In this document: piece after piece, positions 3,892-62,400 of the stretch
How the letters are laid out: each line of letters opens with the position of its first letter
Position numbering within the stretch: position 1 is the first letter of the stretch
Assembly (NCBI RefSeq): GCF_003918875.1
Contig: NW_025765958.1
Span: 310,001-374,000, forward strand
Direction: 5' to 3'
Length of the DNA stretch: 64,000 nt
Source: Haliotis rubra
Taxonomy: Eukaryota
Program-made: the position numbers and the translations under genes
The notes under the pieces: generated by a model
The model's database searches: none
Told to the model about the DNA's origin: nothing
Seen by the model: the letters and a program-made list of their open reading frames with translations, nothing else

Positions 3892-3984
3892 CTCTTGCTT
3901 GACAACGGTATAAGAATCCATACCGAAACGTCGCATCATATATAATAAAAGAAGTTGTTATCCATAAACAATCTTACTTTCTTA
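3892..3984 (+). mobile_element. 93-bp Penelope-like pLTR-derived insertion carrying a hammerhead motif
   Basis: Perfect 12-bp TSD tcgtaatattaa at 3880-3891 and 3985-3996. Absent from the paralogous site at about 14351-14365. AATAAA lies downstream of the ribozyme motif. Confidence 0.85.
3896..3935 (+). ncRNA. Minimal type I hammerhead ribozyme (U3-A8 variant)
   Basis: tgc-TTGACAA-c-ggtat[aagaatcc]atacc-GAAA-cGTC-gca. This gives stem I, the core, a 5-bp stem II and a palindromic ACGT stem III, with predicted cleavage after C3932. Confidence 0.8.
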
Positions 3985-11914: not shown

Positions 11915-12489
11915 TCCCTTTCCTTGGCTGCCTCAATTATTGCCTCAGGGATCAATTCATAAGCCTTCAAGAGCATGTGTCACCTCTGATAATTTGAAGT
12001 GACATCAACTGAAGGTGCTAAACATACGTCTTGAGCTTTGCCATTTAATACAACATTACACATTAATGCTTTTTGAGGGGCTATTTCAATTTGTTGCCAC
12101 AAGAACCAGTTGTCGACTTCCTTTTTTGTGAAACATGCGGGCTATTTTGATGTGATTGTCACATGAGAGGAATGTTGATCATTTTGAGAGGAATATATTT
12201 CTGTTTTGCAATTACAGTTCCTCCAATATGAAGTCACTCCACTTTTTAACTTTAAATTCGTTCATTTTCAGCTTCGTATCCTGAACGAGCACTGGTATCT
12301 GTCCTTTACAGAATTTGATTTGATTTGTCACTCTAACGTGTTAGAAAAGAATCTCCTTGCTTCAGTGATCAACTCGAATGAGAAATGGTAATTAATATTA
12401 TTCGTTATCTCAATCCCTTTTGGTTTCAAAAGTAAAAATATTCCCTTTCATTACAGTGTCCTCTGATCATATAATAATTGGTATTTTGT

Positions 12490-13112
12490 ATCTTTAATTA
12501 GTTAGATCGCACATTGTCTTGATGCCAGAGCCGGAAGATGTTCGAGAAGATGTTGGAACCGTGGTTTCAGTCACAATCGACGCTATTACTTCGGTTTTCG
12601 GGGACGAGGTAGAGGATTTCTACGACCACAGGGCTATGACAGTTTCCCTCAGGACGCCTCCCAGACAAACTCTTTTTTTAGAGTACGGAACGGACCAGTT
12701 CCAACCGTCCTGGTTCAAGAAACACTTTCAAAAAAGAGGGAAGGGGAAATGGACGACCCCAGCAAGCTAGAGAAGAGAGCCACTCAGTTAGCTGCGTGTA
12801 CTTCTGATATGCCAGATATTGAGACATAACACAAATATAGCCGGTAGTTTGAAACATTTTACCAATGAATGGGCTAAACTGATAAGTGATAAGACAATAT
12901 TACAGTTTGTATCTGGAGTAAAACTTGAATATATTGATAATGAATTACAAATGCGAAAATCAGGAAGTACTCATGAACAGTACAAGACGTACTGGGACAG
13001 ATGGATTAAGTTTTGTTCTGGGAAACAAGGTGACCCCTCTTCGGCACTCCAGACTGGTTGGTAGAATGTAGGTCAAATTTCACCTTTACCAAGGTAAGTC
13101 TCGTTTAACCTT
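12490..13112 (+). mobile_element. Internally deleted DIRS-like element
   Basis: IAGSLKHFTNEWAKLISDKTILQFVSGVKLEY (resembles the DIRS RT N-terminus) is fused to STHEQYKTYWDRWIKFC..DP (resembles a tyrosine-recombinase N-terminal domain). Confidence 0.7.
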
Positions 13113-15850
13113 TCCAATGTTCACAAATAACAGTATAAACGTGTTCACGTGAAGATCCCATAAACATCATATATCAGCATAACAGGCAGGGTAGTGTCAT
13201 CTATCTTATTGTCCTCTCTCTTAAGAAGGTAATTTCAAAACTTTTATATTGTAAGATATTATCAAGCTTTCTTGGCATATATATTGATGATTCCTTGGCA
13301 GGAACATGACGGACTCTATATGGATGTGTGTAATTACAAATTTAAATCGTACATTGTTAGAAACATTGGTTTATGCTCATTTATGCATTTGCTCTCTTTA
13401 TGTGTAAGTCGATGTTAGAAATACAAATACATTTCATCAATAACTCCTTGCATAAAGAAACGATATAGACATATATGCATTTTATTACGTGAGTGAGACA
13501 ATGCTTCTTTCGCAGAAACAGGCTATCCAAGCATAAATACCAGTCATACCTTCTGTGGAGACTGATAAACTCTTACGCTAACATGCCTTTATTGAACCCA
13601 CCGATCTTTTGAACCACTAAGTTAATTTCTTTTCATCTTGACGAATAGTCTAAAGAACCAAATTGACCCACCTGCAACCAGGATGCAGCCTATTACTTCG
13701 TCTTGTCATCATACTTAAGGCGGCTGGTGCTCACTCCAGTAACAATGGCGAACGACGGTAAATGATGCATTTATTGTACAAGGCGTTGTCTAGTGTCTCT
13801 CGTGATTTTAAAGATTAGACTTCGTGGTGGTAAAGCACTCACAGTTTCTATCAAGTAAGAGGAAGCGAATTAGCTTGTGGAGTACTATGGGGACATTTGA
13901 AAAAATATAACTATCCCTCAATATTAGTCTTAGATTGATGCCATTGTAGGGCAGGAAACACCCACTGTTTCGCTAACACCTTGTATAAACAATATTTGAA
14001 AGTGATATATAAGCACATACTCATAATATGCTTTGGAATAGTACAACGACTGTTGTGTTTGAGACGTCTTATGAATATGAATGAAATTGTCTTGAACGAT
14101 TGACATTTAATGGAGTCATAAATTTAAGTGTAAAGTATCTAGAACAATGTGTGATTCATGTTTCAGCTTGATTTAGAAATTGCCCTGTGTCCTTTTTGTG
14201 AATAGTGTTGTTACTAGTTTCAGCATCTGTTAATTTAATACTGATTTTGTATCAAATGTTAAGTACCTATGTAATATGGTTTTGTAACCTGATACATCAA
14301 CGAAGACATTTAAATGTGGAATTGACTTCTCTGAAAATCTATTGTGCAATTGCAATATTAAGGCAAACAAACAATTATTGCTTCAGTTGGGAATTTTAAA
14401 ATAATGTCAAACGGTCTTTAAGTCCCCTCACATTTCTGTATCTATATAATTCTTAGAGAACCTTAAAACGGAAACCAATCGAGACATGTTATTTGTGCAT
14501 AATTACAATACAGCTCACATTATAGATCGTCTTAGTGACAGACAATCTCTGTTTAACATCTGTGATATCCGTGAAATACTAAGTATCCTACTACTTAGAG
14601 AGTTCCTTTATTGATCATTGCAGAAAGCATTCGTTCAGCTGTCCAAGTCGCGATTTTATGCAGGCTTTCGTGTCGTAACTAGAATATCCCTGAGGCGTAG
14701 ACAATGATTGTAAAAACCATGTTATAAATGATGTGTATCAATGTTATTATTTAAGGCAGATCGATAGCACCCGAGCTTCACACATGTAATAGGTGATATC
14801 TGATGGAAGACTAGTGGTCTCATTTCTCTTGATATAGAAAAGGCAACGTTTCATGTAAACAGTTGGCATTAGTAGATGTATACCCAGTACACATAGAATG
14901 GAATGCAACACTGAAAACACGTGCATACATTATATAGTTTCGTTCGTTAAGCGTCACATTGCCACTGTTAGATATGGGTAAATGTAACTGGTGGTGAAGA
15001 CTGATTGTCTTGTTTACGCCACCAGCATAAGTAATCATGCCGTCTCACGGCAAAAGATCATCATGTAAGGACATTGTCAGAACCTTTTAATCCTCGCTGT
15101 CACTAGACTACAACACACAGACAGCACGGAATATCTACAATCACCCCACTGGTAGTGACAAGGAATGCACACAGTCGCGTAAACATAAACAATGTGAACG
15201 CCTGCCTCTCATGTTTACAACCTCATTATTCCTATGTAAATACGTCTTGAAAAACTGCTCCTTCGCGCAAAAGGTTTGGGGTTGCCAGACAGATGTGTTT
15301 TGTCAGCTTACAATATTGACAAACTGCTACATTGTTCTCACAACGTCTAATTGTCCTCACACTAGACAACATAACATCAAGATGTATTTAGCTGTTAGCT
15401 ACTAATTGACATAGAACGCAAGTCAAACTATCAGTTTCCGTCATGAATCCACAAACAAGCGATCATGATTCGTTGCGTCATATTAAGACGTATCTATCAA
15501 CATATATTTTATGGCTGTTAAGCTGAACCTGAAGTAGGATATGGTTTGTTTGAACGGTCACCAGATTTCTTTCATATCTATTTAGATATTTTGATACCAA
15601 ACGTGTTGCCGTAGATACTGAATGAAACGAATCTACTCCTCTTCAATTTATGAAAGCTTTCTTGTCAAAGTCGACCTGGGTATTACACTGATTACCCATT
15701 ATTTATTATTCTTAGGCACTGCGTGTGCCCTGTGTTTGATCTGGTATGCTCCTTATTTGATAGTGATTCATGTCGTTTTTATGTTCCTATTCCATTTGAT
15801 GTTTTAACGTAAACGTTCTGCTTGAAGGTTGCTCATGGAGTCCCTGGAAA

Positions 15851-16950
15851 GAATGAATGAATGAATGAATGAATCTCTTTATTTCCTCCAGTTTGTAGTC
15901 CGAAGATCATTATAAACATGTACATGAAATATTTACAGCAACATAATCACAGCAATATATTCACAACACATTCATATAGTCATATATACATGTACAAAGA
16001 AAAATGAAAGGTCTAGAATGCACAGTTTAGTGAGGGAAGCAAGGAATATAGGTATTTACAGAAGAGGACAATCATACATCTCCATGACATTTCATCAATA
16101 TCGTTAGTTACTAGTAGTTCACCCCCAGAAAATATTGATAACATTTCATCTTCAGATACTAGTTCTATTTGTACATAAACATCCACATCAAAGAGATCTA
16201 TAAGTTTTGAAAAGAAATTATTTCTGTTGTACATATAGTGTTCACAGTGTAGAATTACATGGCAGTCATAATCATTACAATATCTTTTGCAGAGTTCACA
16301 ATGTTTTGAGAGTTTTCCCCTTGAGCTGATTTGTACACAAAACTGTAATATATCTTTAAACTGTGGGTAAAAATACATCAAACAATACAATCTATGTACA
16401 TCAAAGAAATTGTGGGTAAGGCGATATTTATTCATATCTTGCCTTACCCACACTTGAGAAACCCATCGTTCAGTTTTATTTATGCAATTAATAGTTATTC
16501 TTCGCCATGACGATTTATATGGAAACCTTCCAAAATCGAGATAGTCACTAAGATAATTGAAGAGATGGTATTTTAAACTGTTTTGAATAAGTGTGTCATA
16601 TATAATATGTAAGACAGCTGTTCTATTTTGAAAGGTGGCTAAATGTACACTGAAAATATCCTTAAATGAAGGGTTACACTTGCTGTTGCACAGCTTGCAG
16701 AGAAATAATAGTCTACATTTATCTATATACCCATACATGCTCCACAATCCAAGGTTACCTAGCACTGAAGCTGAGGAAAAGCGCTTACCGAAACCCTGAA
16801 TGCATCTGGCAAAATATCTTTGTGTACTTTCTACCAAGTCATAATCTTTACCCCGAAGAATGGGTAAAAGTTCACAACCGTAAAAACTCGTTGGAAGTAT
16901 CATTCTTTTCCAAATTAACAGTATATCCTTCAACACGTTTCCGGAAAATA
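15851..16950 (-). mobile_element. 5'-truncated non-LTR retrotransposon (RTE/RTE-X-like) with 3' part of ORF2
   Basis: ORF 16013-16936 has the post-RT motif LPTSFYGCEL and a C-terminal CxxC...H...C knuckle. The 3' UTR ends in aataaa plus (ATTC)n at 15851-15885. Confidence 0.85.
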
Positions 16951-17823
16951 TATAGATCCTCTGTTAATTGGTTAATGTGGCATGTCACTGACAGCAAACA
17001 AATTAATGACAGTTCGTGCTTTTTGATTCCACAGAGGACAGATAAACAGAACTGCGAAGCTCTATTTTTAAAACAAAGATTAGAGGGAGTGGTACATGTA
17101 TATCCAGTCGTAGGAGTATCGTGAGCCTGAGACCATCAACTCAGTTTGTGTTATCAGTCATGAAACGGGCATGTCAGCACAAGGTCTGGTGTGAAGAGTA
17201 ACACACTGGTAGAATTCAGAAAAAGCTATGTAGTTTCGTGAGAAATTTGATCTTCTGGTTTCCGGATTACAACAACAAATTAATCCATCAAGATCAAATA
17301 TCAATAGGTAATTTGGTGAGTGAGTTGGTGAGTAGGGTTTAAAGCCGCTTCGAACAAAATTTCTCTCATTTGTCGTCAGTTTGATATGGGAGGGAAGGCT
17401 TGAGGAATCTCTGTCTTAGACGTTTCGCATTTTGGTGAAACCAAGTTGATAAGAATATGGTGTTGGCAATCTGAAAACACATAATCGGGCGTACCCGAGC
17501 AACGCAAATCTGCCCAACAAATCCCAGCGTCTCTGACGACTGTGCCTCCAGATCCAGTCATAAAAGCAGGTGCTATGTCAGTTGTTGACTGCTAGCTTCT
17601 TTGAGTGGCATATTTAGAAGTCATGTAGACGTCGGATGAAATTTGTCCTTATTAATTGTTGACTGAGCAAAATCGGTGGAAGTCTCTCAAGAACTTAGGT
17701 TGTATTCTATTTCCCCGTCAAAGAACAGCTGCAATTTCATGTACAACTCACGAGAAGCTGAAAACCCTTAATTCCTCTATATTACTATTGATAGTACGGT
17801 ACTCTCTCTGAACATGGTCTCAG

Positions 17824-18185
17824 CAGTGAGGTGAGGTGAGGTGAATTTGGGTTTAACGTCGTGCTTGAGAATATTTCGCTCATATGACGACGTGCATGCG
17901 TGTGTATGTGTATGTGCGGCTGCTTATACTAGTACAGACTGAAGCTGGTTTTATAGTGCTAGCCCACTGAGATACCATGCCGCAGTGAAGCATGAATACC
18001 CCACTCAGACACAATATATTGACTCCGAGCCGACCAGTCCTTGTTGTACCCATTAAAGCCGAGCGCCAGACAGGGACCAACAAGTACCATATTTTAACGT
18101 CTTTTGGTATGACGCGGCCGGGATCGAACCCCCGACCTTCCACTCTCCGGGCGGACGCTCTAACCACTACACCACGGAGGCGGTC
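17824..18185 (-). mobile_element. Full-length SINE, family A
   Basis: tRNA head, Meta-like domain and (CACCT)n tail. TSD tggtctcag at 17815-17823 and 18186-18194. Confidence 0.92.
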
Positions 18186-20431
18186 TGGTCTCAGTTGTCA
18201 TGGCCTCAGCAAATGTTGCAAGAAGTTTCATGGTGGTCATGTTGAAGATATTTCCTGCATGATGGTCGATGAAAACCCATACTTTGACCCATATTTTGTC
18301 CTTGCATGCGTGCTAGGGTCGGGTATGTTTGAATTGTGAGAACATGGTGTCGTTATTGGTCGTCTATTGCGTTATCCATTTGTACCGTCATAGAATCGAC
18401 TATTTCACCTACGTTGCTTGGTAAATATTTTTCTTGGAGCAGGAATCAACAGTTTCTGTCTTTTCACGTTTAGCCTAATCAATTATGCTATTTCCGTATC
18501 AGTTAGTTAGTGTTTCTCTCATATGCTCATTAGATTGAACGTGACTAAACAGACAAGCTTAAAACACTCTGGAGAGTTAAAAAGCTGACTTACCTTGGCT
18601 TCTTTCCTCTTAGTTGAGTAACAAGGAAACATAACTATGATCTCATTCGCTGCTAAAGTTCTCAATAGACACAAATCCTCTGTGCCGGATCAAAGAAGCA
18701 AGTGTGAATCGTGAGTTGGTCAATGTTATTCATACGTTGCAGCTTGATTGCACATAAAACAGTGGACAGTATGTGTTTAAATACTACCATTTCCTTATTA
18801 TGTTTTTATAAATATATTCTATTATGTTTCAATCTATACATACATGGCATGCAGTTATGAATTATCAGACGTGTAACGAACTTATGTAACTAATGAACTT
18901 CCTCACAAGTAGTTATCTTACCAGCTATTTCTGTTAACTTCACAACCAGAACCAGAATCCAGTTACATTAGTCAGTGTACAATGTAGCCCTGTCAATCAT
19001 AGGCATTAAACATAAAACAAATTCATTCACTTTCAAAAGCAAAATCGTATGTTGTGAACATTTAGATGCAAGTGTTTTCACCAGCTACGCAGTAACATCG
19101 TTAAATTATCAAAGAAGCTATGTATGTTATACTAACAACATACTCCCGGAGGGATGGTATTTGTCATGGAACTGCTGACCTGACACACTGATTCCATGTC
19201 AAATCTCGGTAACGTTTTGTTACTTCAAACGTTCTTAACTGTAATAGCTCAATTCCTCTGTAAATCGATATGATGTGAGGCACATTTCTGTAGGGAATTA
19301 TAGTAACCACATTTACTGTATTGCCGAAATTACATAATAGAGTGTCAACGCGTGACTATTGGCAGTTTCCATTGTGCTTGATTTATTATGGCAAGAGAGA
19401 AGATAACAGGAAAACGCCATAAAATATTGTCTTGCATTGCGGCCTGTTCATACATTACAGTACATGATCATTATCTTCAGGGCTGTAACTTGATGTTAAT
19501 GTTTCCCAGATTGAGTATTTGGTGGCCTTTAATTTGCAACATAAAATGAGTTCAATATTGAATTGATGTGACAAGAACCATTTCCATCAGAATACAGATT
19601 ATCTCCAAAATGACGTGTGATGGCCGTCCCAGATCTTTTGCACCTTTCCTAATTGCGGGTTTTAAAATGTAAAATTATCCGTGAATATGAAAGTGGTATT
19701 GTTAGAAGTAGTAACTGGTGAAGAGATTTAAATAAGTATGGTTTATGAGAAACCTCAAAATTGATTTATCTAGAATTGTGTTTCCTTTTTGACAAAACCC
19801 GACAAAATAATTACACATTATGCAGGTTTGTATTACAAGCAACCATTACATTTGTACCTGTTGATCGCAAAATATTCTTGCAGAGGGTCCTTGTAGATCT
19901 ACGTAATGTCGGATTATGTCAATTATCTGACACCTTTGACGTGAAGAACTTGATTTCGTTTGGTATATTAATTTCATACAAGAAACTCTGTAACAGGGCG
20001 TACTTCGATGGAGTTAAATAAAATGGAGTTAAATAAAAATCTCTCATGACAAGGGACATGTTTTTTGTTGCTTTGTCTTATGTATTACAGTAGTGAGGTT
20101 TGCAAAAATATGATTTATTCAAGCAAGAGGCATGGACATATTGACGTTCAACGTGGTGAAGAAATGATGATCGTCCACACCATGTTATAACCTGGATAAT
20201 ATGCATACATACTGCCTGTATAAACAAAATGAAGGACGGACAGCTTCAGATGATATTTATTGTTCGCCAGCTGTATCCAAACTGTCATCTGAGTGGTGCC
20301 ATATCTTAACTTCAAACGCCCAACCATACATTAAAGTATATGAGTACACCACATGGTATCGACAGGGTTACTGAAATATCTGCTTCCCTATTGTCTAAGT
20401 ATTCCATTTTAAATAGCACACTGTAACATGT

Positions 20432-20784
20432 GACCGCCTCCATGGTGTAGTGGTTAGAGCGTCCGCCCGGAGAGCGGAAGGTCGCGGGTTCGATCCCCGA
20501 CCGCGTCATACCAAAAGACGTTAAAATATGGTACTTGCTGGTTCCCGCCTTGCGCTCGGCATTAATGGGTACAACAAGGACTGGTCGGCTCGGAGTCAGT
20601 ATAATGTGTCTTATTTGGGTAATCATGCTTCACTGCGGCATGGTATCTCAGTGGGCTAGCACTATAAAACCAGCTTCAGTCTGGGCTAGTACAAGCAGCC
20701 GCACATACACGTACACACGCATGCACGTCGTCATATGAGCGAAATATTCTCAAGCACGACGTTAAACCCAATTTCACCTCACCT
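20432..20784 (+). mobile_element. Full-length SINE, family A
   Basis: Head gaccgcctccatggtgtagtggttagagc...ggttcgatccc. TSD cactgt(a/t)acatgt at 20419-20431 and 20785-20797. Confidence 0.92.
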
Positions 20785-20961
20785 CACTGTTACATGTCCC
20801 TATCAGCACATGATGCCACCAAACAAATTGTTCTTAAAACAATACCTTAAATTATATATGCATGTCACTAGCTGTACATTGGCAGAAACACGACAAAAAC
20901 ATTTCCATAATCCTCGGGAATATTAGTTTCAAGTCGTGCCCATTGAGCGAATCCGACGATA

Positions 20962-21530
20962 TCATAAGTCATGTGCATCATGTGGTTGCCAATAACTATC
21001 AATCATTGATGAGACAATGTTTGGACTGGAGCAGGGAAGACTCATACTGAAGTTCGATTCTCCACTTGCAGTACTTTCTCCAAGGCCAACCCCATAATAA
21101 CCAAGAAAAATGATATGAAGAACATGTATTTCAGTAGGGTGATATGCGGAATGCATATCGTACTTAACTACCCAATCACCACATTTGATACACATCAGAT
21201 CATCTTTCCAGTCTTCATATTTTACTGGCAGTTTAAAGCCATGTTTGTGTTCCGTTGACAAGATACGTTTCTATTTCCAGAAGATGGAGTTGGTAATGAC
21301 AGCGGAGTAACTGTACCCGACCCTTCTTCACATTCCACTTATCTGTTTTTGACAGCTTCACAAACATGATCATATTGCTCCAAGACTAAACGGGTTGTTT
21401 TTAATTCCATAGGTAATGTAAAATGTATCTTGTATCTTCCTGCAATGATATCAAGTACAAACTGAGTGGAGCCAGTGACACGTTCGAACTGTATGCAAGC
21501 AAACTCTGATTCAGCTTTAAGTATCTAAAT
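20962..21530 (-). pseudogene. DIRS/Ngaro RT remnant (paralog of 11010-11730)
   Basis: YEDWK...KYDMHSAYH.TEIH..H..FLG, collinear with copy A. Confidence 0.7.
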
Positions 21531-22475
21531 TACACGTTATCTAGTAAATTTGCAAGCTTATTAACAGATCCGTCAGTCTCTTCGCGAGAAGTAGATAAAT
21601 GCTGTAAGATACTGTCAACTGTCTTGTAAATGTCGCCAGGTGCTTGCACGATAAAATGGCTAATGAATACATGCAAAGTCAACAACTCATATCAGAAGCC
21701 TTCAAAAGCCTGTGTCACCTCTTCATAATTAGAAATGATATCAACCGAAGGTGCTAAACATGCGTGCTAGAAAAGAATCCTCTTGCTCATTTGAGTTGAG
21801 TTCAGTTGGGGTTTACGTCACATCGGCATTATTCCAGCCATAAAGTGACGGGATTAAGTGTGAATTTATAATTTATATAAGTCCAAATGAGTTGTTATCT
21901 TGCTTAGTGATCAACTTGAGTGAGAAATGATAAATGAATATTTTTCATGATCCCAATCCTTTTTTTGGTTTAAAAGTAAGCATGACCTTTCATTACAGTG
22001 TCCACTGATCATACTCTTTCTAGTAGTTTAACCATACTGCCTAATTATATTGGTTATACTGTAAGGTTCATGTGCTGGCATCACGTTAACACTTGCTTTT
22101 TGGACTGGTAGCAGCTGCTTAACCTCTTAATCATTACATTTCTTTTGCGTGCTTTTGAATATATTTTTTTGCCGAGCCTTACTTTGTTCATCCAGCATTT
22201 CTTCACCGGACATCTGGCATCTCCTGATATTGCTGCATGAGACATGCTCACCAGTGCTCCGGCAAGCTAATCTTAGACAGTCTTAAACTGGAGAAGAACA
22301 TACATTGTAGTCAATGTATGTATCTTTTCTCAAAGGGAATCTTTTGAGATATGGGCGTGACTTTTGCGTGTGTGGAAATTATTTTTATCGAGGTCGGCGT
22401 AAAACGTATTCCATAATGTTTAGGCAAACCATTGATAAAAGTGTATATTTATGAAGGCATGATTTTTTCGTGGGT

Positions 22476-42480: not shown

Positions 42481-43070
42481 CACTGTCACAGAAAGCATTT
42501 GAGACATGCAATTGATGCCATTCGGTGTCTCAAAAACAAAAATCATTTGTTTCAGTTTTGGGAACCTCGGAAAGAAAAAGTAAAAACAATTGATGTTTAA
42601 CGCTTAAAACCATTATCCTAATTGACAGCAGATTTATGTACATGGACTGGAAATAGAAATACCAGGGAACCCGTTTGGTATTCAGAGCTATGCATAAAGA
42701 TTTACATAAAGAGTTACAAAGACTCCCCACAAGACTCTAACTTAGCTTAATGTGGGATGAAACACGTGTCACAGACGTTTACCTTTTTGGTGAAACGGGT
42801 ATTGTGCTGACAAATATACAATGATACCTTTTTGGCATTACCAGGCTTTGGCGTCTGAATTTCAAAACGTTTGAGGTACAGCCAAGATTTAAACAGAGAC
42901 CTTCACCAAAAGCTATTTGATGGGCTTTACAGCATTCCAGACCTCAGTAAAGTTTTCAAAAGACTTTATAAGTTAGTTGGATCGAAATGATTCTTATTCA
43001 GCAGATATTTGTCAGGTTTATGGAAACGGATGTTCTCAATTATTCACGTGATATCGTTTTTACATTTCAG

Positions 43071-44213
43071 GATATGAACGTAACATCGACTGACGATATC
43101 AACTCAACCACAAGTTCTCCCAATAAACTGATCGAAGTACACACATTGGAAATCCTACTTTGGGTGTTAGAGAAACATGTGCCATTTGCAATTGCAGTCA
43201 ACAAGTGTGTTACTCCAATCTGGTACGCTATCGGTACCATCGGCAACATAATGTCAGCAGCCATTTGGCTAAGCCCCCGCCTACGATCATTCAACAGTCC
43301 AGCCTACTATCTTGCATCTCTGGCAATCGCAGATGAAGTGTACCTCGTGCTGCACGTCTTCTATGAATTGGAGAACCCTTGGCTGATTGGTGCGCTTAAT
43401 CTCAGTGGATGGTGTGAAATGTGGAATCTTCTGTACATGGCAGCTCAATATACTTGTGTGCTACTGGTGTTTGCCTTCACGGTGGAACGGTTCCTATCGA
43501 TATGCCATCCCTTCAAATCAGAGAGGTTCAGCCGCACATCTCGCTCACCTAAAGTCATTGTGGCAATTGTCATGATATCGGTTGTGTTTGCTACTCCTCA
43601 GGCATACTTCTGGCACGTCACAAGCTATTCCGAATGTCAGTTGCGACACAGTGAAAAAGCTCAGGGTGAAAAATCATTCTATTATATCTGGTCCTGGGGC
43701 TCAGAGATGATTATGTTTGGAATTGTTCCCATTCTGGTTCTGTTTTCAAATATCTGTGTTCTCAGGAAGATGCGACATGTTGGCCAGTTGAAGATGAAGG
43801 ACACAACAACCATCTCAACCGCTAATATGAGATACTTATCAACGACCATCACGTTGTTGTGGGTGTCATTTTTTCTGATCTTTACGACTCTCCCAGTCAC
43901 CATCACATTTGCTATTCAAAACAGGATAACACTTGGTCCAAACCTTCCCCTCCAGGAAATGGCGGAGAACTCTACGTGGCAATCCTACTTCTCCTATTAC
44001 ACTGCAAGAACGATAATAAAAGAAATAGGCATGTGTCATCACGTATGTAATATATTCATCTATTGCCTCACCAGCAAGAGATTTCGACGCAGAGTTATAC
44101 ATATTCTGTGTGGGCCTCTGGATTGCTCAAAAGCCACAGAACGTGAAGAGTCTTGGAGGAATCCAAGTCCTTTGTTGAAGGATACGACAAAGATTTGTCT
44201 CAATTCAAGATAA
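43071..44213 (+). CDS. Rhodopsin-class 7TM peptide GPCR, FMRFamide/sex-peptide-receptor-like (main coding exon)
   Basis: Seven hydrophobic segments with GTIGN (TM1), LAIAD (TM2), Cys at the top of TM3 and in ECL2, TVERFLSICHPF, TM7 NIFIYCL and helix-8 SKRFRR. N-terminal NVT/NST sequons. The acceptor tttttacatttcag precedes 43071, so ORF residues 1-28 are probably intronic. An alternative start is ATG 43074 (379 aa). Confidence 0.95.
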   Translation, partial: DMNVTSTDDINSTTSSPNKLIEVHTLEILLWVLEKHVPFAIAVNKCVTPIWYAIGTIGNIMSAAIWLSPRLRSFNSPAYYLASLAIADEVYLVLHVFYELENPWLIGALNLSGWCEMWNLLYMAAQYTCVLLVFAFTVERFLSICHPFKSERFSRTSRSPKVIVAIVMISVVFATPQAYFWHVTSYSECQLRHSEKAQGEKSFYYIWSWGSEMIMFGIVPILVLFSNICVLRKMRHVGQLKMKDTTTISTANMRYLSTTITLLWVSFFLIFTTLPVTITFAIQNRITLGPNLPLQEMAENSTWQSYFSYYTARTIIKEIGMCHHVCNIFIYCLTSKRFRRRVIHILCGPLDCSKATEREESWRNPSPLLKDTTKICLNSR

Positions 44214-48673: not shown

Positions 48674-49090
48674 TAGTGTATGCCAATGTGAATGAGTCTG
48701 TTTCGTTGAACGCATTTTAACAGCCTTCCAGTGACGTCACGACGTGCCACGATCAGCTTAATGTGTTCCTGGATTCAGACTTTTGTCACTTTGGTGAAAC
48801 CCATTTGAAGCTTAATCGGGAAGTACCACGATTCGAACACACCATTATACGTTTCTGACGTGCCGAAAGGAAGCAAAATGCAGCGCCCCGGACGACAAGA
48901 CGCCTCTTGCTCATCCGTTCGACGGACCGAATCACATTCATTGAGCCATCTAAACCATTTGAGCTTAAAACGTTTGTGTTAGCTTCAGCCTGGATTTCAA
49001 GACTAACTTACCAGATTTCGTATTGTCCATTTGATTTACATGTGTACAAATGGAGGATATATTAGATTATGTCAAGCATAAAGTAATCAT

Positions 49091-49304
49091 TATAATATAG
49101 AACAATTTTTATGGATAACAACTTCTTTATTTCGTGAGTGCGACGTTTCGATGCAGATTCTTGTACCGTTGTCAAGCAAGAGTGTCAAGCAACAACGGTA
49201 CAAGAATCTGTATCAAACGTCGCACTCACGAAATATAGAAGTTGTTATCCATAAAGAATGTTCTATATTGTAAATCTCAACTTCTAAAATGCCACTCAAA
49301 CAAG
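49091..49304. mobile_element. Penelope-like inverted pLTR pair with hammerhead motif
   Basis: Arms 49091-49172 and 49192-49272 are inverted. 13-bp TSD ataaagtaatcat at 49078-49090 and 49305-49317. Homologous to 3892-3984. Confidence 0.85.
49139..49178 (-). ncRNA. Minimal hammerhead ribozyme (U3-A8 variant)
   Basis: Minus strand reads tgc-TTGACAA-c-ggtaca[agaatc]tgcatc-GAAA-cGTC-gca. Stem II has one G-U pair and one mismatch. Confidence 0.7.
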
Positions 49305-51565
49305 ATAAAGTAATCATCACTTTGCCTTCAGCCGTGCAATTTCGCAAGGCTATGTTATACGTGTCCGCCATTGTAAATATTTATATCTGTCATAGTACTA
49401 GGTTCATGAGACGGGACATACAAATAGATGGAATAAAACCGGCAGGTCCATATAATTGCCGCACTTGACGATTACAGGGATCAAATGTTCATGATAATGC
49501 TCAGTGGTGAACTTTGTCGTTGGCTATTATACTCGACCGCCATCAGTACATTGGACAGTGTAATGCCTAGAATTCGTTGAAAGGTGAGAACACAATGACT
49601 TTCCCACAGTTCCTGCAACACTATAGTAAACGTCAGAGTTCTCTATCACTTCGGTCATCCCGATCACATTCAGCTGAGATATTGTGAAAGAAAAGAAAAA
49701 TACAGTACAAATGATCTTAATTGGACACGCCCCTGAAACTGAAAAGGATAAGCATTTACCTCTCTTTGAAGAATATCACATGGTTAACACACCTACTTGT
49801 CCATGTGACATATATACTAAATGTAAGTTAACTGTTGATGCAGATACTTTCGAAGAATCTTAACAACGATTAGACGTGGTTCATGCTTCAGAAAAGAGTG
49901 ATGATCTTTTATTGATTTCCGCTTAAGTTGAGTCAAGAACATGACACAGGAATTTGAATGTGATCCTGTGTTTAAATGAAAACAAGTGAAACTTTGGTAA
50001 GGCTGTCCATAATTTTTTCCCCGAGTTTCCCATCCACAGCCCGAATTCATATTTCGATGTGAAATTCTAGAAAGTTAACTGATGTCAGTATGATTCGCCG
50101 CTATGTAAATGTATGCCCCGATGCGTTGTGATGATACTCTTGCACACTCATAAAGAACAGGTCATCTTAAAATTTACTCAACTCTGCATGTATTTAAACA
50201 GATAGACGGATAGGTAGAATTTGTTATGTAATCTCCTCCATACTATAATACATATTGTGTATACAATTATATATTTATTCAAGCAGCCAGTAATAGGAAT
50301 TCATAACTATGCAGTATAGTTATACTTATTCGGAGTTTTGGATATTCATAAAGTTTACACAGGAACAGTCAGATGCATTTATAGTCTTTTTAGACTTCGT
50401 TTACATCAGATACATGTGTATGATCCCTTGCATATATTCAACTGCATGTTCAATTTTGCCAAATCCTTTGTCAGAAACAGGCCACAGTGCGGAGAGCTTC
50501 TGGATGTTTGGGTTTCCAGAATCAAATTGTGACGTGTTTGATAGGAATTTCGCAATGGCTGGATGACGACAGTACAGCACCTTGAGGCACTCGCTCCTAG
50601 CATCACTGCATTTATCGTCAACCTCGGCACCACATGACCTCCATCTTCCCGGAGAGCTGTGTTACTAATGTGTCAGTAAATGCAATAGGTTCATCATTGG
50701 GAGCGTTGGTTTACGCGCGTAAATTGGGGAATCAGCTCCCTTGGCAAGAGGTGTAACAACCAACCCACACAAAACACAAGACATGAGTAAATAAACGTGA
50801 GTTTTTTGGGCAGCCGCCAAATCACACACATAATTCTCCAGGATATATTCAATCAAGTTTATAGCAAGGTACAACCATGTACACGTATATGTACACGTAT
50901 ACCGGGAACGGCAATCCTATAAAAGCATGACAAAGGACTCATTAGTTACGATATATATCAAGGTGCACAATGTAATCGGCAGTTTACGTATCATTGAATA
51001 GAGCACACCAGACACACTGATAAATGACCCGAGTAGACAGTCGCACAAGACATACAGCACACAGCTTATATATTCAAATGTAGTAAGATTAAATCATAAT
51101 GGAAGTGATCTATTATACACAATTATGTTAATATTTGAGAAACACACCAGGACCTTGACACGTTCCACATAAACCCCACTTAAACCCGGTTGTGTCAAGG
51201 GTCGTAACAGTTACGGTACGATGGATTAAACGTAAGACATAAGAGCATTATTGTAAAGATTTTAATAAGGTAGAAGATAAACAATGAGTCATTAGACAGT
51301 CACAGAAGGATTTGTGACTGTATCGTCCGTTTTATGTACCTAGCCTACCTGTTTTAGCTGTCACAGATTAAACTGACGATCAGGCTATTGTGAACATAGG
51401 ATTATGTCATTTAGTTTGACGGAAGCATCGGGGTTAAATGTGTCTAATGGATGACCATTTGAGAATATGCTACGAATGGATATGTGGCATTCGCGTGAAT
51501 TGACCAACGTGAAATAAAAACATACAATACAGACAAACACGTTGCACCTCGGCTCTGTCAGCTTA

Positions 51566-57151: not shown

Positions 57152-57372
57152 GACCCGTCAAGATTCATGTTAGAATTAATCTTCAGCAGCCAATGCTTGT
57201 CGAAAGTGGAAACTCTTGGGATCGGTGGGTCAGGCACGTTGAGATGGCTAATACATGCATGTCATCATATCCCAGTTGTTTGGTTTGATGTATTGATGTC
57301 AATTGATCTGGTTTAAAGACCACGATCATACAACTTGGATATTGCTGAGGGTGGCGATAATAAATAAACAAA
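57152..57372 (+). mobile_element. SINE-like family C, degenerate
   Basis: gacccgtcaagatt..gttagaattaatcttcag..atgcttgtcg, with a degenerate tail. Confidence 0.7.
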
Positions 57373-57499
57373 AACTCCATCTGTGCACAAGCGTTTCAAA
57401 CTATGAACTAAAATCTTATGAATACAAAATGCAATCTAGAAAGTGATCAAATGTAAAGCATATTATGTTTGCGATTACCCTTTCTCAGTAAAGTACAGA

Positions 57500-57885
57500 T
57501 TCTAGTACTTTTGGATCAGGATTCGAATTCACACTCTCAGAGTCAGGCACCTTGTCGCAAGCACACAAAGCCAGCTGTCTAACCCATTCAGCCACCACGG
57601 CGTCTACAAAAATGGAAGTCAGGCAAGTGGTAGTCTAGACCACTGACTTTGTGTACTCTGATCAGTGTAAATTAGCACGGCTCACACGGCCGAAAGCTAT
57701 GAACACACAATGCCATTTAGAAAGTGGTAAAATATTACACATGTTGTCTTTGAGCTTACACTTGTTCAGTAAAATACAGATTCTAGTACTTTTGTTGTGT
57801 TGAGTCCCATCTGGGATTCGAACCCTTGTGCTGACTCTGTGTGCTGGCGATTAGGGCGTGGGTTCGAATCCTACATGGGATTGTT
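57500..57885. mobile_element. Fragments of a further tRNA-like repeat (long variable region)
   Basis: Minus strand ggtggctgaatgggttagac...ttcgaatcc at ~57520-57597. Related B-box pieces at 57812-57880 and 59148-59190. Confidence 0.5.
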
Positions 57886-58838
57886 CCTAAGGATCGATCC
57901 TCAAGGTTGATAAATTAGATTCGGTTTCAAAGGCAGATAATTTGACTGCAAGGTAATGAGACAAACTGTTGGAATTTCTAAATGAGTCATGCCAGATCTG
58001 GAAGCACATTGCATCTTTAATATGTTGTGGAATATAAAAGCCATGGCGGCAGATTTCGGTTTATAGTTCATTTATGAAGGAAATAGAGGAAAATAATCCC
58101 TTGGCGAACTCTTAGAGGTGTTTGAAATGGTGCCTATTCAGCAACACGCAATATTTGTGGCATTCGTATTAGCAGTTGTCGAGTTGTGATGACTTAACTG
58201 TAGTCACAACTGTAACTCAAGAAAATATAAAAAAAATCAGATTTGACACCGATCTGGAACACACTGCACAAAACCGACTGACCTATCTCCAAGTTAAGAA
58301 CCTGGCTTGTCCCACCGTTGGCAACCCCATACAAAAAGACACTTCGTTCTCTTCCCCGGCCCCCCAAAAAAAAAAACAACAACAAACAAACAAACACACA
58401 CACACCAACCACCCCCAAAAAACAAACAAACCCTAAATTATTTTTTTTTAAATGAAAACAAAAAACCAACAACCCCAAAACATACAAAAACAACAACAAC
58501 AACAGAAACAACCAAAATAAAACCGCAACAAACAAACACGGGAAACGTATGGTAGAAGTACAAAAAGCAAGTTGCATCGAAAATCATGTGACAAATTTAG
58601 AAAGGTCACATATCTACTAAAAACTCCTTACTGAGCCTTGTTTTGACAAAGGCAGTTTGTACACACATCAATACATCAATTAACTTATAATGAATAATGG
58701 AGGCCTGCTTGTAAAGCGTCAATAATGGATCAAAGATATAAACCCTCTATATCATGTTTCTTCAGTGGGCCTAACAAAATGGAAACTATTAATGGGGTAT
58801 AGCTGAGGGTGGCGTTAATCAATAAACAAAAACACCAT

Positions 58839-59010
58839 CCTTTGAGAGGCATTTTAGAAATTGTGAAGATGAAAGAAAACTAAGTTCTATGGATAGTCTA
58901 CTTCTTTATTGCAATAAGTGCGACGTTTCGGTGTAGGTACTAACACCGTTATCAAGCAAGTGATCGTTATCAATAAAGAAAGTGACTATCCATAGAACTT
59001 AGCTTTCCTT
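58839..59010 (-). mobile_element. Penelope-like pLTR-derived insertion with hammerhead motif and partial inverted arm
   Basis: TSD caaa(a/t)acaccat at 58827-58838 and 59011-59022. Empty paralogous site at 57369-57380. The end tttgag.ggcattttagaa is shared with 49091-49304. Confidence 0.85.
58919..58958 (-). ncRNA. Minimal hammerhead ribozyme (U3-A8 variant)
   Basis: Minus strand reads tgc-TTGATAA-c-ggtgt[tagtacct]acacc-GAAA-cGTC-gca. Perfect 5-bp stem II with a compensatory pair relative to 3896-3935. Confidence 0.82.
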
Positions 59011-59380
59011 CAAATACACCATATGTGCACGAGCGTTTCAAACTATGAACTAAGAACTTATGCATACAAAATGCTATTTAGAAAGTAACACATATTATAT
59101 TTGGGATTACACTTTCTCAGTAAAGTACAGATTCTAGTACTTTTGGACCGGGATTCGAACTCACACCCTCAGAGTCAGGCACCTAATGGCAAGAACACAA
59201 CTGGCGATATATGTGGCATTCGTATTAGCAGTTGTCGAGTTGTGATGACTAAACTGTAGTCACAACTGTAACTCAAGAAAACATTTACCCTTGATTTAAA
59301 AAAAATTAAAAATCAGATTTGACACCTATCTGGAACACACCGAATAAAACCGGCTAACCTGTTTGCAAGTTAAGAACCAG

Positions 59381-59487: not shown

Positions 59488-62400
59488 CTGGCCTGTCCCA
59501 TCGTCGGCACCTGCAACACAAGAAGACACTCCCCCCAAAAAAAGAAACCCACAAAAAAAACAAAAAACCAAAAACCAACAAAATACAAGCAAAAACAACA
59601 AACAAACAAACAACAAAACAAAACAAATAACAACAACGACAGCAGCAAGAGAAACTGCCAAAATACAACCGGCAATTTGTACACACATCAATACTCGTTA
59701 ACCTATAATGAATAATGGAGGTCTGCTTGTACAGCGTCAATAACGGATCAAAGATATAAACCCTCCATATCGTGTCTCTTCAGTGGACATAACAAAATGG
59801 AAACTATTTTGGCTGTCAAAATATAACGGCAACACATGTGAATGACCAGTCACCGACTCATGGAGTAAATGACAAAAATGAAACACGGACAAGTAGAATT
59901 GATGAATGGATCACTGAAAATCAGTGACGATAACGGATGCAAATGTTCTAGAATGTTCTCCCCCTTGCCCCTTCTGCCAGCGTCCCCACACCCACTTTAT
60001 GAGTATTAGCACTCCCACGTATCATGTTCGCATTGAAGTAGTCGTTTTCAAATGAGAGTCATTTTCAAATGAACAAAATGTGAAATAGAACCATGGCTCA
60101 TGGGATGATATGGCTCAAATAACCTTCAAGGTGTGTATCGAAATTCCCTAGGAACACCATAGTAATTATGCTGTCAAACTGCAGGCGCGTGTCAGTTTAG
60201 TTTACTGACAAGGTCTTCTGGTTTCCACTATCTCAAACCCTTGAGTTAACCGACATCACCTCCACGTTCGTATCCCTAAATGTATCGTCTATGTGGATCA
60301 TTTAGTAGAAAGGATGGCATCCGTTTCGTAAAAATATGTTTCAGGAGGGTCATACTATATTTTATATCAAATTCATATTTTTATAACATATATAACTAAA
60401 AATTGACCAAAAATGCTTTAGAACTGTATGTAGCAACGGTCAAGCTTAAAACAAGTGTTGACCAAACTAAAGCTTAAGACCTTATTAGTTTCCCGTTTAT
60501 ACCTTCTCCAATACCGGTAATCGACAACGTCATGTGCGAGTGCGTCAAACCGAAAGGCCATATTAATGCTGTTTATCAATACGTTGACACCTAAATATAA
60601 CTGAGTTAACACTAATACATATTAAACGTAATATCTGGATAGTGTCGCCAAATGGTTATGAAGTGTCTGATTGTTGTCTAAGCACAAGTATGTTGAAGAA
60701 ATGATAAATCAATTTTAGGGTTAACTGAAAACATAACAATTTAATATTACTTCAGTATGAGTTCGTTTCACCACCCGTATGTTCCGGTAAAAACAAACAA
60801 AAAAAACGTGTTCTTGCTCACACGGCCTTGAGTCTGTCTGGCTTTCATAATCTGACCGTGATCAGTACTGTTTTACTCACATTTTAAAAAAAATCGCTTG
60901 ATCAACATTTCTGACCAAATTCCATGATCGAATTCAGGTGGAAAAATATTGATGCATGTCTGAGAAATTGACATTCTCTGCTTATAATGAACTGTCGGAT
61001 CGATTTGTGCCTAACAGTTTTGGTGAAACATTGCGCTAATTCTTAGATCAGTGGAGACTGAACTAATGCAAGCTTGTGTGTGCGTTTGTCATATTGTTTT
61101 GCATAATTATATAGATATTCTTCTGCAACTGAGGTGAATGACAATACATAATTATTTACACATCAAAGTCTCTGTATCGGTAGCCCTATGTAAGGCTTCG
61201 ATAACAGTACGACGAACCAGACTCGTGCAACCAACGTAAACAAGTGATAACTTATATTAGCAAATCAAAACAGAAAATCAGTATTTACCGCATTTCATCA
61301 GAGAATGAACGAAAAACATTCTATCATATACAATAAAGAATAAAAGATGATAAACATAAGCATATGCAATATGTTTAACCGACTAGGTAAGATCTAAATA
61401 ATAGGCAGTGGTACTCTGATGGCCGAATGGAACTCTGGGTATTTTTGTGTGTGTGTGCGTGTGTGTGTGCGTGTGTATGTTACCACGTATATATGTCGGG
61501 TACAAGATGCCTTCATACGTATATGGATATTGATTTGTGTGTGGGCCTATGACCTTCACGGTTAATATAGATGTGTTGATGGTGTTGTTTTGATTGCAAT
61601 TTGAAATAAGAGTTTGGTAAAGGTTAGAATTCACAATCAGCGAATCAAACCTCTGGAAAAGCCTGAAAACTAACAGGTGCACCATGGGCACATATCTGAA
61701 ATATGTGTACCCATATGTGTATCGCCTTGTCATTGCATTGCTCGCCAATACCGGGTGCTGGATTTCAGAACATGGATTCACAGGAAAGGTCATGCAGAAA
61801 GCGCTGACGATTAATAGTTCTTTCTGAATATTTCGAGACAGTATCTACCAAAAGAAAAGCAACATGCCTGCAATTAACTTATGAATAATGTTAATCTCAC
61901 AAGACGGGATTGGATATCGCGTTTAGTTTGACATTATGCATACTTCATGTCTCACAATACCATATAATTTATAGGATGAGGAAAACAATCATAATGGGAT
62001 GCTTGTTTTTGTTCTAACATCAAACCACGGTGACATTTACACTATAAAGACCCAATCAATAATGATCACCTATTTCCTTTGTCCTTTTGCAGCATTGGCG
62101 GGGAATGTGACAGAAATGCATTGTTTTCTTTATCAGGCTTCACAATGAAAATATGATAGCTTTCCAGCTTGTAAACAACTCCGTTCTGTATGGGTCGGCA
62201 AACAGTTCACGGATATTCATGTGATCACGTATACTGTCAATAGAATTGTTTGTTTCGTGTAAAATATAACAACTTGGTGAAAGTCTGAAATACATTAAAA
62301 TAATGCCTTCACAGAACCAAACCACAGGACACGAATTTTTTATCAAATATTACAAATTGGCATTTATGTCACAAGTTAACTCAAACTATAGACAACTTGA

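What the first reader, a model, noticed from the sequence alone, without database searches (positions are those of the whole stretch)
58827..59022. Diverged second subfamily of the hammerhead element shows compensatory changes
Seen: compared with 3896-3935, stem II changes ggtat/atacc to ggtgt/acacc (an A-U pair becomes G-C), loop II is rewritten, and the free N7 position changes from C to U. The other core positions, stem I and GAAACGTC are unchanged while the flanks diverge. A 12-bp TSD (one mismatch) and an empty site at 57369-57380 are present. Inference: selection on the RNA structure acted in the source elements, which is the best in-window evidence that the motif is functional.
Basis: partly seen in the sequence, partly recalled or inferred. 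Interest (0 to 1): 0.78.

Follow-up and report, generated by a model that had tools for sequence, protein, structure and literature searches.

The report
Penelope-type mini hammerhead retro-insertion in abalone
The flagged stretch is a dead, 172-bp fold-back copy of a very abundant short jumping element whose first 43 letters encode a known minimal variant of the hammerhead self-cutting RNA carried by Penelope-like retrotransposons; it is a new example of a published kind, not a new kind.

Summary
Observation confirmed. Window 58839-59010 is an insertion between 12-bp target duplications (58827-58838 and 59011-59022, one mismatch). A related copy of the host repeat has the site empty at 57369-57380.

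On the minus strand the element carries UGC / UUGAUAA-C / GGUGU-loop8-ACACC / GAAAC-GUC / GCA. Compared with the copy at 3896-3935, one helix II pair is A-U instead of G-C, position 7 is C instead of U, and 4 of 8 loop letters differ. The other 15 core letters and helix I are identical.

Rfam gives no hammerhead hit because the core is not canonical: it has U3-A8, an extra C before G10.1 and no helix III loop. That design is published for minimal hammerheads of Penelope-like elements (Cervera and de la Pena 2014).

The insertion also shows Penelope hallmarks: a head-to-head inverted truncated arm, an optional ~30-nt tail at one end, and 11-13-bp duplications.

Public contigs of four runs from three coded organisms hold 11,000-22,000 pieces each of this 125-nt unit, deepest over the ribozyme. 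The "second subfamily" is therefore a major family.

Selection on the RNA is plausible but rests on three independent sequences, and cleavage is untested. The scan reached the same reading before on other DNA of this genome (s1-329446).

The parts
58827..58838 (.). Left target-site duplication, CAAAAACACCAT
   Evidence: the repeat finder family D3; sequence
58840..58964 (-). Main 125-nt unit of the repeat family. Sense is the minus strand, with the 5' end near 58964 and the 3' end at 58840.
   Evidence: Thousands of contigs in four runs align from 58840 to 58955-58964. Sequence beyond 58964 has no consensus (agreement 0.41). Alignment A2.
58840..58870 (-). Optional ~30-nt 3' tail. It is present in this unit and in the left arm of copy B. 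It is absent from copy A, from the right arm of B and from the inverted arm here.
   Evidence: Two alternative 3' ends about 32 columns apart in A2. Depth drops about 3-fold over 58848-58876. Matches the Penelope 'tail' signature (PMC11167929, PMC3846280, PMC8557442).
58919..58958 (-). Minimal hammerhead motif. Helix I 5' strand is 58958-58956 (UGC). U3-A9 plus the extra C is 58955-58948. Helix II is 58947-58943 paired with 58934-58930. Loop II is 58942-58935. G12 to C17 is 58929-58922. Helix I 3' strand is 58921-58919 (GCA).
   Evidence: Sequence. Descriptor scan. The centroid fold of the whole insert gives helix I and helix II, plus a C-G12 pair closing helix II, with the rest of both core strands unpaired. 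Design as in PMC4209133.
58921..58922 (-). Predicted self-cleavage site, 3' of C17 (58922). This is inferred, not shown.
   Evidence: Hammerhead rule of cleavage after GUH. Head-to-tail joints in contigs of related copies end at 58922-58925.
58965..59010 (+). Inverted, 5'-truncated partial copy of the unit. It lacks the ribozyme and the tail and is joined head-to-head to the main unit.
   Evidence: Inverted repeat I1, 83% complementary. BLAST 58870-58911 against 59012-58971, 90.7%. Fold of the whole insert: -61.6 kcal/mol, z = -9.5.
59011..59022 (.). Right target-site duplication, CAAATACACCAT
57369..57380 (.). Empty site in a paralogous copy of the host repeat, CAAAAACTCCAT
3892..3984 (+). 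Copy A. A single arm with the full ribozyme (core from 3899, GAAACGUC at 3925-3932), the short 3' end, and 12-bp TSDs at 3880-3891 and 3985-3996.
49091..49304 (-). Copy B, a head-to-head fold-back of two arms. The right arm (minus strand) has the full ribozyme with one helix II mismatch. The left arm is cut inside the core, lacks G12 and carries the tail. The 13-bp TSDs are at 49078-49090 and 49305-49317.

Best explanation
Window 58839-59010 is one fixed, inactive retro-insertion of a short (about 125 nt) non-autonomous element derived from, and mobilised by, Penelope-like retrotransposons.

Shown: it is an insertion with a 12-bp target duplication into a tRNA-SINE copy. It consists of a full unit plus a head-to-head inverted truncated arm. 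The family has two alternative 3' ends about 30 nt apart, the 'tail'. The unit is present as 11,000-22,000 contig pieces in each of four runs from three coded organisms. Its first 43 nt fit the published minimal type-I hammerhead of Penelope elements in the U3-A8 variant: an extra nucleotide before G10.1, a G10.1-C11.1 pair, a 5-bp helix II, no helix III loop (palindrome ACGU) and a 3-bp helix I.

Inferred: in transcripts of master copies two such motifs pair through ACGU to build a shared helix III and cut after C17 (58922). Master copies were kept under selection for helix II pairing and the core, which left the compensatory changes seen between subfamilies. The copy in the window itself does nothing now.
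For: Insertion anatomy. Family size and unit ends.

Motif features read from the sequence match, point by point, the features listed in PMC4209133: the U3-A8 covariant core found in Schistosoma Cercyon elements, a nucleotide between 9 and 10.1, G10.1-C11.1, and palindromic 15.2-16.2.

The full descriptor gave 0 hits in 20 Mb of random sequence. Core plus helix I is 21/22 identical against 32/56 elsewhere, p = 6e-4. All five helix II substitutions keep pairing, P about 0.01. Slid controls give 12-59% paired against 87.5% for the real register.

Penelope hallmarks: a head-to-head inverted 5'-truncated copy and an optional 30-40-bp tail at one end only (PMC8557442, PMC3846280). The tail is explained by two internal start sites of the Penelope reverse transcriptase and is described as unique to these elements (PMC11167929). 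Here two alternative 3' ends are seen in four arms.

Head-to-tail joints in contigs run from the unit's 5' end (58961-58965) back to 58922-58925, at or within 3 nt of the predicted cut.
Against: No Rfam hammerhead model matches, even at E up to 10.

Helix I is only 3 bp and helix III exists only in a dimer. The designed dimer is not the predicted lowest-energy dimer.

No Penelope reverse transcriptase or GIY-YIG gene was found: the four ORFs of 150 aa or more gave only a GPCR match in Pfam, and shorter ORFs were not scanned. No autonomous partner was identified.

No RNA run was available, so neither expression nor cleavage ends could be looked at.

Full-length genomic copies keep the ribozyme, so their templates were uncut. 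In the one Penelope element tested in vitro, cleavage is not needed for insertion and no RNA ends at the cut site were seen.

Covariation rests on three independent sequences.
Confidence: 0.75

Rival explanations
1. The conserved 5' module (hairpin plus flanking letters) serves another purpose in the element's life cycle, for example as a promoter or as a binding site for the reverse transcriptase. On this reading the hammerhead likeness is vestigial or coincidental and the RNA does not cut itself in vivo.
For: Published minimal hammerheads of this type cleave very poorly in vitro. Catalytic mutants do not change insertion by a Penelope protein in vitro, and no RNA-seq ends map to the cut site there. 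Naiad-type Penelope elements thrive without hammerheads. Here helix I is only 3 bp, there is no Rfam hit, and full-length copies retain the uncut motif.
Against: All eleven fixed core positions are present, with the one change (U3-A8) being the pair that keeps the known tertiary contact. The full descriptor is absent from 20 Mb of random sequence. The same variant recurs in flatworm Penelope elements. Tandem joints cluster at the predicted cut.
Confidence: 0.15
2. It is an ordinary SINE-like retroposon moved by a LINE, not by a Penelope-like element. The inverted arms would arise by twin priming.
For: TSDs of 11-13 bp and 5' truncation are also typical of LINE-driven insertion. No Penelope gene was found among the four ORFs of 150 aa or more in the window.
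Against: There is no A-rich or microsatellite 3' end. There are two discrete 3' ends about 30 nt apart, the tail signature reported as unique to Penelope elements. The inverted arrangement is head-to-head, as described for Penelope. The ribozyme is of the Penelope minimal type.
Confidence: 0.07
3. It is a miniature inverted-repeat DNA transposon (MITE) whose long inverted arms are its terminal repeats.
For: A 52-nt inverted repeat and a very stable hairpin.
Against: The inverted repeat does not reach the left end of the insert, where 58840-58859 has no partner; its right arm, as reported by the repeat finder, runs on into the right TSD, with 8 of 12 letters there complementary. Copy A has no inverted arm at all yet has a perfect 12-bp TSD. 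TSD length varies from 11 to 13 bp. Arms are truncated at different internal points.
Confidence: 0.02

Closest known systems
Minimal hammerhead ribozymes (min-HHR) of Penelope-like elements, U3-A8 variant (Cervera and de la Pena 2014, PMC4209133)
   Same: U3-A8 in place of C3-G8. An unpaired nucleotide between A9 and G10.1. A G10.1-C11.1 pair. No helix III or loop 3, with palindromic 15.2-16.2 (ACGU). A short helix I. Many dispersed single motifs, and pairs on opposite strands 100-700 bp apart.
   Different: Helix II is 5 bp here, against 7-8 bp in the flatworm families. Helix I is 3 bp, against 4-5. The host is a gastropod mollusc according to earlier notes of the scan. The motif sits at the 5' end of a 125-nt unit with no coding element in sight.
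Penelope pseudo-LTR insertions with an inverted arm and tail (Arkhipova et al. 2013 PMC3846280; Craig et al. 2021 PMC8557442; Frangieh et al. 2024 PMC11167929)
   Same: A head-to-head inverted 5'-truncated copy next to the full copy. An optional ~30-nt tail at one end only. Short TSDs. Cis-acting flanking-repeat sequence sufficient for mobilisation in trans.
   Different: The whole unit is only 125 nt, whereas pseudo-LTRs are about 180-220 bp in rotifers. No ORF lies between the repeats. TSDs are 11-13 bp, against 8-10 bp reported in Adineta vaga.
Metazoan non-LTR retrozymes (Cervera and de la Pena 2020 PMC7229834; Li et al. 2026 preprint 10.64898/2026.07.22.740005)
   Same: Short non-autonomous hammerhead-bearing repeats of animals, proposed to derive from Penelope flanking repeats. 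They are abundant in molluscs.
   Different: Retrozymes are 170-400-nt tandem repeats with canonical type-I hammerheads that have a real, if short, helix III, and they are expressed as circular RNAs. Here the copies are dispersed or fold-back, the ribozyme is the minimal variant, and no RNA data exist.
Schistosoma Sm-alpha / Sj-alpha SINE-like elements with hammerheads (reviewed in PMC6765202)
   Same: A SINE-sized dispersed retroposon carrying a hammerhead.
   Different: Sm-alpha has a Pol III promoter and a canonical, active type-I hammerhead with loop-loop contacts. Neither is seen here.

Membership tests
Hammerhead ribozyme (canonical, Rfam models) | Match to a curated covariance model (Hammerhead_1, _3, _II, HH9, HH10) | tested here: not met
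   No hit at gathering score in the window, and none at E up to 10 on 58780-59080.
Hammerhead ribozyme (canonical, Rfam models) | Core C3 U4 G5 A6 N7 G8 A9 ... G12 A13 A14 with three helices | tested here: not met
   The core reads U3 U4 G5 A6 U7 A8 A9 plus an extra C. Helix III has no loop and cannot form in one molecule.
Penelope-type minimal hammerhead (Cervera and de la Pena 2014) | Catalytic boxes with a paired 3-8 (C-G or the U-A covariant), GAAA, and a GUH cut site | tested here: met
   UUGAUAA ... GAAAC GUC in C, and the same with C7 in A and B-right. The U3-A8 variant is described.
Penelope-type minimal hammerhead (Cervera and de la Pena 2014) | [quoted passage not shown] | tested here: met
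   C at 58948, and at the same column in A and B.
Penelope-type minimal hammerhead (Cervera and de la Pena 2014) | Conserved G10.1-C11.1 and a helix II with compensatory changes within a genome | tested here: met
   G-C in 4 of 4 sequences. Two pairs change on both sides. 95% of helix II cells are paired.
Penelope-type minimal hammerhead (Cervera and de la Pena 2014) | No helix III or loop 3; palindromic 15.2-16.2 allowing a dimer | tested here: met
   A15.1 C15.2 G16.2 U16.1 are contiguous, giving the palindrome ACGU. Dimer formation itself is not testable here, and the designed dimer is not the predicted optimum.
Penelope-type minimal hammerhead (Cervera and de la Pena 2014) | Helix I of 4-5 bp (2 bp in the Drosophila virilis variant) | tested here: inconclusive
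   Only 3 bp (UGC/GCA), invariant in A, B-right and C. This lies within the published range of variants but below the typical size.
Penelope-type minimal hammerhead (Cervera and de la Pena 2014) | Self-cleavage after position 17 | not testable with these tools
   No RNA run is on record. Tandem joints at 58922-58925 in contigs are only suggestive.
Penelope-like element insertion (mobilised by a Penelope RT/GIY-YIG protein) | Inverted 5'-truncated copy joined head-to-head at the 5' end | tested here: met
   C: 58965-59010 against 58870-58911. B: two arms. Opposite-strand joints are common in contigs. Literature.
Penelope-like element insertion (mobilised by a Penelope RT/GIY-YIG protein) | Optional 30-40-bp tail at one end only, from two reverse-transcription start sites | tested here: met
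   A and B-right (and, by its coordinates, C's inverted arm, which is not in A2) end at columns 100-103 of A2. B-left and C's main unit run about 32 nt further. Literature.
Penelope-like element insertion (mobilised by a Penelope RT/GIY-YIG protein) | Sequence shared with the flanking repeat of an autonomous element encoding RT and GIY-YIG endonuclease | not tested
   The window's four ORFs of 150 aa or more gave only a GPCR match in Pfam; shorter ORFs were not scanned. No abalone Penelope locus could be fetched with the collections on hand.
Metazoan non-LTR retrozyme | Tandem repeats of 150-450 bp, each with a canonical type-I hammerhead; expressed as circular RNA | tested here: not met
   The copies in the window are single or fold-back, not tandem. 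The ribozyme is the minimal variant. No RNA data.

The most novel reading that the evidence does not exclude
Contigs of related copies contain head-to-tail arrays with a 37-43-nt period. These run from the unit's 5' end (58961-58965) straight back to 58922-58925. The arrays may therefore be concatenated or rolling-circle reverse transcripts of the 43-nt 5' cleavage product itself. That would be genomic-fossil evidence that this minimal U3-A8 hammerhead cuts in vivo at the predicted site, and it would define a 'retrozyme' several-fold smaller than the 150-450-nt repeats described so far.
Probability: 0.12. Interest if true: 0.6.

Novelty: new member of a known kind. Interest (0 to 1): 0.3.

Why it matters
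It adds a gastropod example of the U3-A8 minimal hammerhead, which was first reported in flatworm Penelope elements. The motif here heads a 125-nt unit present as 11,000-22,000 contig pieces in each of four runs from three coded organisms. That gives a large natural data set for testing whether these weakly active ribozymes are under selection and what they do for Penelope-type elements, which is still an open question in the literature. For genome annotation it explains a common class of small fold-back repeats that Rfam-based ribozyme scans miss. It does not change what is known about how such elements work.

Tried and rejected
- Rfam at gathering score on the whole window and at E up to 10 on the locus gave no hammerhead.
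- A covariance model built from the three full motifs (R1) and run without filters over the window found only the four known motif copies. All other hits were at E of 0.2 or worse. The other three GAAACGTC sites (17419, 35072, 55374) are unrelated.
- A public-run search found no RNA run, so expression and RNA ends could not be examined.
- A pattern scan of metagenome contigs did not return abalone copies. It returned an unrelated repeat family in low-GC, ORF-poor contigs with the same core design. Its helix II shows decay only and no compensatory change, so it adds no covariation evidence. The remaining hits, in GC-rich, gene-dense contigs, look like chance matches. The viral-contig scan gave two chance matches.
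- A look-up of the window's GPCR protein, meant to confirm the organism and fetch more of the genome, found nothing on record. The species name therefore rests on earlier notes only.
- Lunse et al. 2017 (PMC5785218) is not held and is cited only through the review PMC6765202.
- Thermodynamic modelling of the dimer was uninformative. The lowest-energy homodimer simply opens the helix II hairpins.
- The MITE reading was rejected on copy A and on the arms not reaching the termini.
- A global alignment of filled against empty site misplaced the gap, so BLAST was used instead.

Full report
THE OBSERVATION

The repeat finder gives a 12-nt direct repeat at 58827-58838 and 59011-59022 with one mismatch. 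BLAST of the region against the window joins 58795-58839 to 57337-57381 (89%) and 59011-59200 to 57369-57568 (84.5%). The sequence around 57369-57380 is therefore a related copy that holds the 12-nt target once and lacks the 172 bp in between.

That related copy is not an allele. Both are copies of a tRNA-derived SINE that runs on the minus strand from about 59224 down through the insertion point. The 'empty site' is thus a paralogous repeat copy. It still fixes the limits of the insertion exactly.

THE MOTIF

The motif lies on the minus strand. In hammerhead numbering it reads as follows.
- Helix I 5' strand: UGC (58958-58956).
- Core: U3 U4 G5 A6 U7 A8 A9, then an extra C (58955-58948).
- Helix II: GGUGU (58947-58943), an 8-nt loop, ACACC (58934-58930).
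- G12 A13 A14 A15.1 C15.2 G16.2 U16.1 C17 (58929-58922).
- Helix I 3' strand: GCA (58921-58919).

Against the copy at 3896-3935:
- one helix II pair is G-C instead of A-U;
- position 7 is U instead of C;
- 4 of 8 loop letters differ;
- the remaining 15 core letters and the six helix I letters are identical.

The body 3' of the cut site is only 28/48 identical. Core plus helix I is 21/22 identical against 32/56 for loop plus body, Fisher p = 6e-4.

IS IT A HAMMERHEAD?

Rfam says no, with no hit at gathering score and none at E up to 10 on the locus. The reason is visible in the sequence:
- the core is UUGAYAA, not CUGANGA;
- one nucleotide is inserted before helix II;
- A15.1 C15.2 G16.2 U16.1 are contiguous, so helix III cannot form within one molecule.

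These are exactly the features that Cervera and de la Pena (2014, PMC4209133) list for the 'minimal' hammerheads of Penelope-like elements:
- no helix III or loop 3, with palindromic 15.2-16.2 so that two motifs build a shared helix III;
- a conserved nucleotide between 9 and 10.1;
- a conserved G10.1-C11.1 pair;
- a short helix I;
- in the Cercyon elements of Schistosoma, a U3-A8 covariant of the C3-G8 tertiary pair, with about 1,300 hits.

I tested how easily such a match arises by chance. A descriptor with all these features found the two intact copies in the window and nothing in 20 Mb of random sequence with the window's dinucleotide make-up. The loose version (paired 3-8, helix II of 5 bp or more, GAAA) found 50. 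The family's founder is therefore unlikely to resemble this ribozyme by accident.

Helix I is weak at 3 bp, against the published 4-5 bp (2 bp in Drosophila virilis). I mark that feature inconclusive.

COPIES IN THE WINDOW

A pattern search, my descriptor and a covariance model run without filters all find the same elements and no others.
- A: 3892-3984, plus strand, 12-bp TSD.
- B: 49091-49304, 13-bp TSD.
- C: the element under study.

Aligned on the ribozyme strand (A2) they define a unit of about 125 nt with the ribozyme at its 5' end.
- A is a single arm.
- B is two arms joined head-to-head. Its right arm has the full motif with one helix II mismatch. Its left arm is cut inside the core and lacks G12.
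- C is a full unit (58840-58964) joined head-to-head to a truncated arm (58965-59010) that lacks the ribozyme.

The arms end at two discrete 3' points about 30 nt apart. A, B-right and C's short arm stop at columns 100-103. B-left and C's main unit carry a further ~32-nt tail.

WHAT MOVES IT

The literature on Penelope-like elements describes this anatomy:
- heavy 5' truncation;
- an inverted 5'-truncated copy adjacent at the 5' end;
- a 30-40-bp tail often present at only one end (Craig et al. 2021, PMC8557442; Arkhipova et al. 2013, PMC3846280; the latter reports TSDs of 8-10 bp and head-to-head junctions).

Frangieh et al. (2024, PMC11167929) showed in vitro that a Penelope reverse transcriptase starts at two adjacent internal sites of its RNA. 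The tail is the stretch between them, a signature they call unique to these elements. The two 3' ends seen here fit that.

I could not close the link to an autonomous element. The window's four ORFs of 150 aa or more gave only a GPCR match in Pfam; shorter ORFs were not scanned. No abalone Penelope locus could be fetched.

FAMILY-LEVEL DATA

I laid Logan contigs of four public runs on 58500-59350 at 80% likeness or more. The runs were two samples of coded organism A, one of B and one of C. The stretch is 851 letters, within the operators' limit.
- Between 11,000 and 22,000 contigs per run were laid on the stretch. The longest listed pieces on the element span 58840 to 58955-58964; the rest fall on the neighbouring SINE.
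- Beyond 58964 the loose ends have no consensus (agreement 0.41), so 58964 is a true unit end.
- Summed depth is highest over 58906-58963, the ribozyme, in all runs. It falls stepwise towards the tail.
- Among the listed variants at 5% or more inside the unit, five lie 3' of the cut site and one (58937) lies in loop II. None lies in the core or helix II. However, 55 rows were not shown, so this is supportive rather than conclusive.

The 'second subfamily' is thus a major, old, multi-species family.

The joints table shows frequent opposite-strand joints (fold-backs). It also shows head-to-tail joints that run from 58961-58965 back to 58922-58925, with periods of 37, 40 and 43 nt, seen in up to four runs. 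The upstream partner therefore ends at, or within 3 nt of, the predicted cut after C17. I read this as a hint that RNA ending at the cut site has been reverse-transcribed. Other 'to' ends also occur (58877, 58893, 58913, 58934-58941), and I could not see the contigs themselves.

SELECTION ON STRUCTURE

Three independent sources are available, because B's two arms come from one event. Helix II reads GGUAU/AUACC in A, GGUAC/GUAUC in the source of B, and GGUGU/ACACC in C. That is five substitutions, and all of them keep pairing:
- two full compensations, at 10.4-11.4 and 10.5-11.5;
- one G-C to G-U change.

The one unpaired cell (A-C in B-right) differs from B-left, so it arose with or after that insertion.

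The count of structure pairs gives 95% of helix II cells paired, two pairs changed on both sides, and 12-59% paired in slid registers. Its shuffle control is weak with four rows (37 of 500). My simulation of five random substitutions in three lineages keeps all pairs in about 1% of trials.

Together with the core conservation, this is what purifying selection in master copies would leave. The sample is small, and structure conservation is not the same as cleavage.

Folding the whole insert gives a long helix from the two arms (-61.6 kcal/mol, z = -9.5). In the centroid structure helix I and helix II form; a C-G12 pair closes helix II and the rest of both core strands is unpaired. The unit alone folds no better than shuffles, apart from the helix II hairpin.

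WHAT REMAINS OPEN

The function of these ribozymes is unsettled even for bona fide Penelope elements. In vitro activity of minimal forms is low. Catalytic mutants insert normally, and no RNA ends at the cut were seen in anole data. Hammerhead-less Naiad elements proliferate well. No RNA run exists here.

The rivals are a conserved 5' module with another role, LINE-driven mobilisation, and a MITE. They are weighed in their own sections.

COMPARISON AND NOVELTY

This is a new member of a known kind: the U3-A8 minimal hammerhead of Penelope-type elements, here heading a 125-nt non-autonomous unit in what earlier notes of the scan call the blacklip abalone. I did not verify the species; one search found no record.

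The same reading was reached earlier in this scan on other DNA of this genome (s1-329446). I reached the U3-A8 reading from the sequence before seeing that note. I then checked it against the paper and with the tests above.

Noticed in passing
window 59023-59224 (minus strand); related copies at 57337-57568 and 57737-57794: The hammerhead element inserted into a tRNA-derived SINE with a B-box-like GAGTTCGAATCCCGG near 59160. The part at 59080-59224 is among the most abundant sequences in all four public runs laid. ARAGORN calls no tRNA there.
   Followed up: partly
window 59125-59140 and 57493-57508 (minus strand): The SINE body holds a hairpin GUAC-UAGAAUCU-GUAC that is nearly the same as helix II plus loop II of hammerhead copy B (GGUAC-AAGAAUCU-GUAUC). 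This could be a module shared between the tRNA-SINE and the hammerhead element, or chance.
   Followed up: no
Logan contigs laid on window 58922-58965: Head-to-tail arrays of only the ribozyme part, with periods of 37, 40 and 43 nt. The unit's 5' end follows directly on 58922-58925, at or next to the predicted cut site. Seen in up to four runs from three coded organisms.
   Followed up: partly
loci L001, L002, L009, L010, L014, L032, L066, L077 and about 25 more (metagenome contigs): A dispersed repeat in low-GC, ORF-poor (eukaryote-like) metagenome contigs has the same core design: UUGAAAA-C-GGGAC ... GUCCC-GAAAC-GUC-GGUAAG. Its helix II shows only decay and no compensatory change. Helix I is 2 bp.
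   Followed up: partly
window 58860-58871 against 59011-59022: The inverted repeat found by repeat-finder runs on into the right target duplication, with 8 of 12 letters complementary. This could be microhomology used at integration, or chance.
   Followed up: no
window 58935-58942 (minus strand): Loop II of this subfamily contains the palindrome GUAC, which the dimer fold uses for loop-loop pairing. The other subfamily's loop has no such palindrome.
   Followed up: no
window 42987-44213 (plus strand): An intron-less 408-aa ORF with a rhodopsin-family 7TM receptor domain (Pfam PF00001, E = 6e-18). The exact protein is not on record in the contig index.
   Followed up: partly
window 58651-58790 and 59671-59808; 59198-59281 and 58142-58225: Further short repeats flank the element, at 91% and 94% identity. 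The neighbourhood is a patchwork of repeat copies.
   Followed up: no
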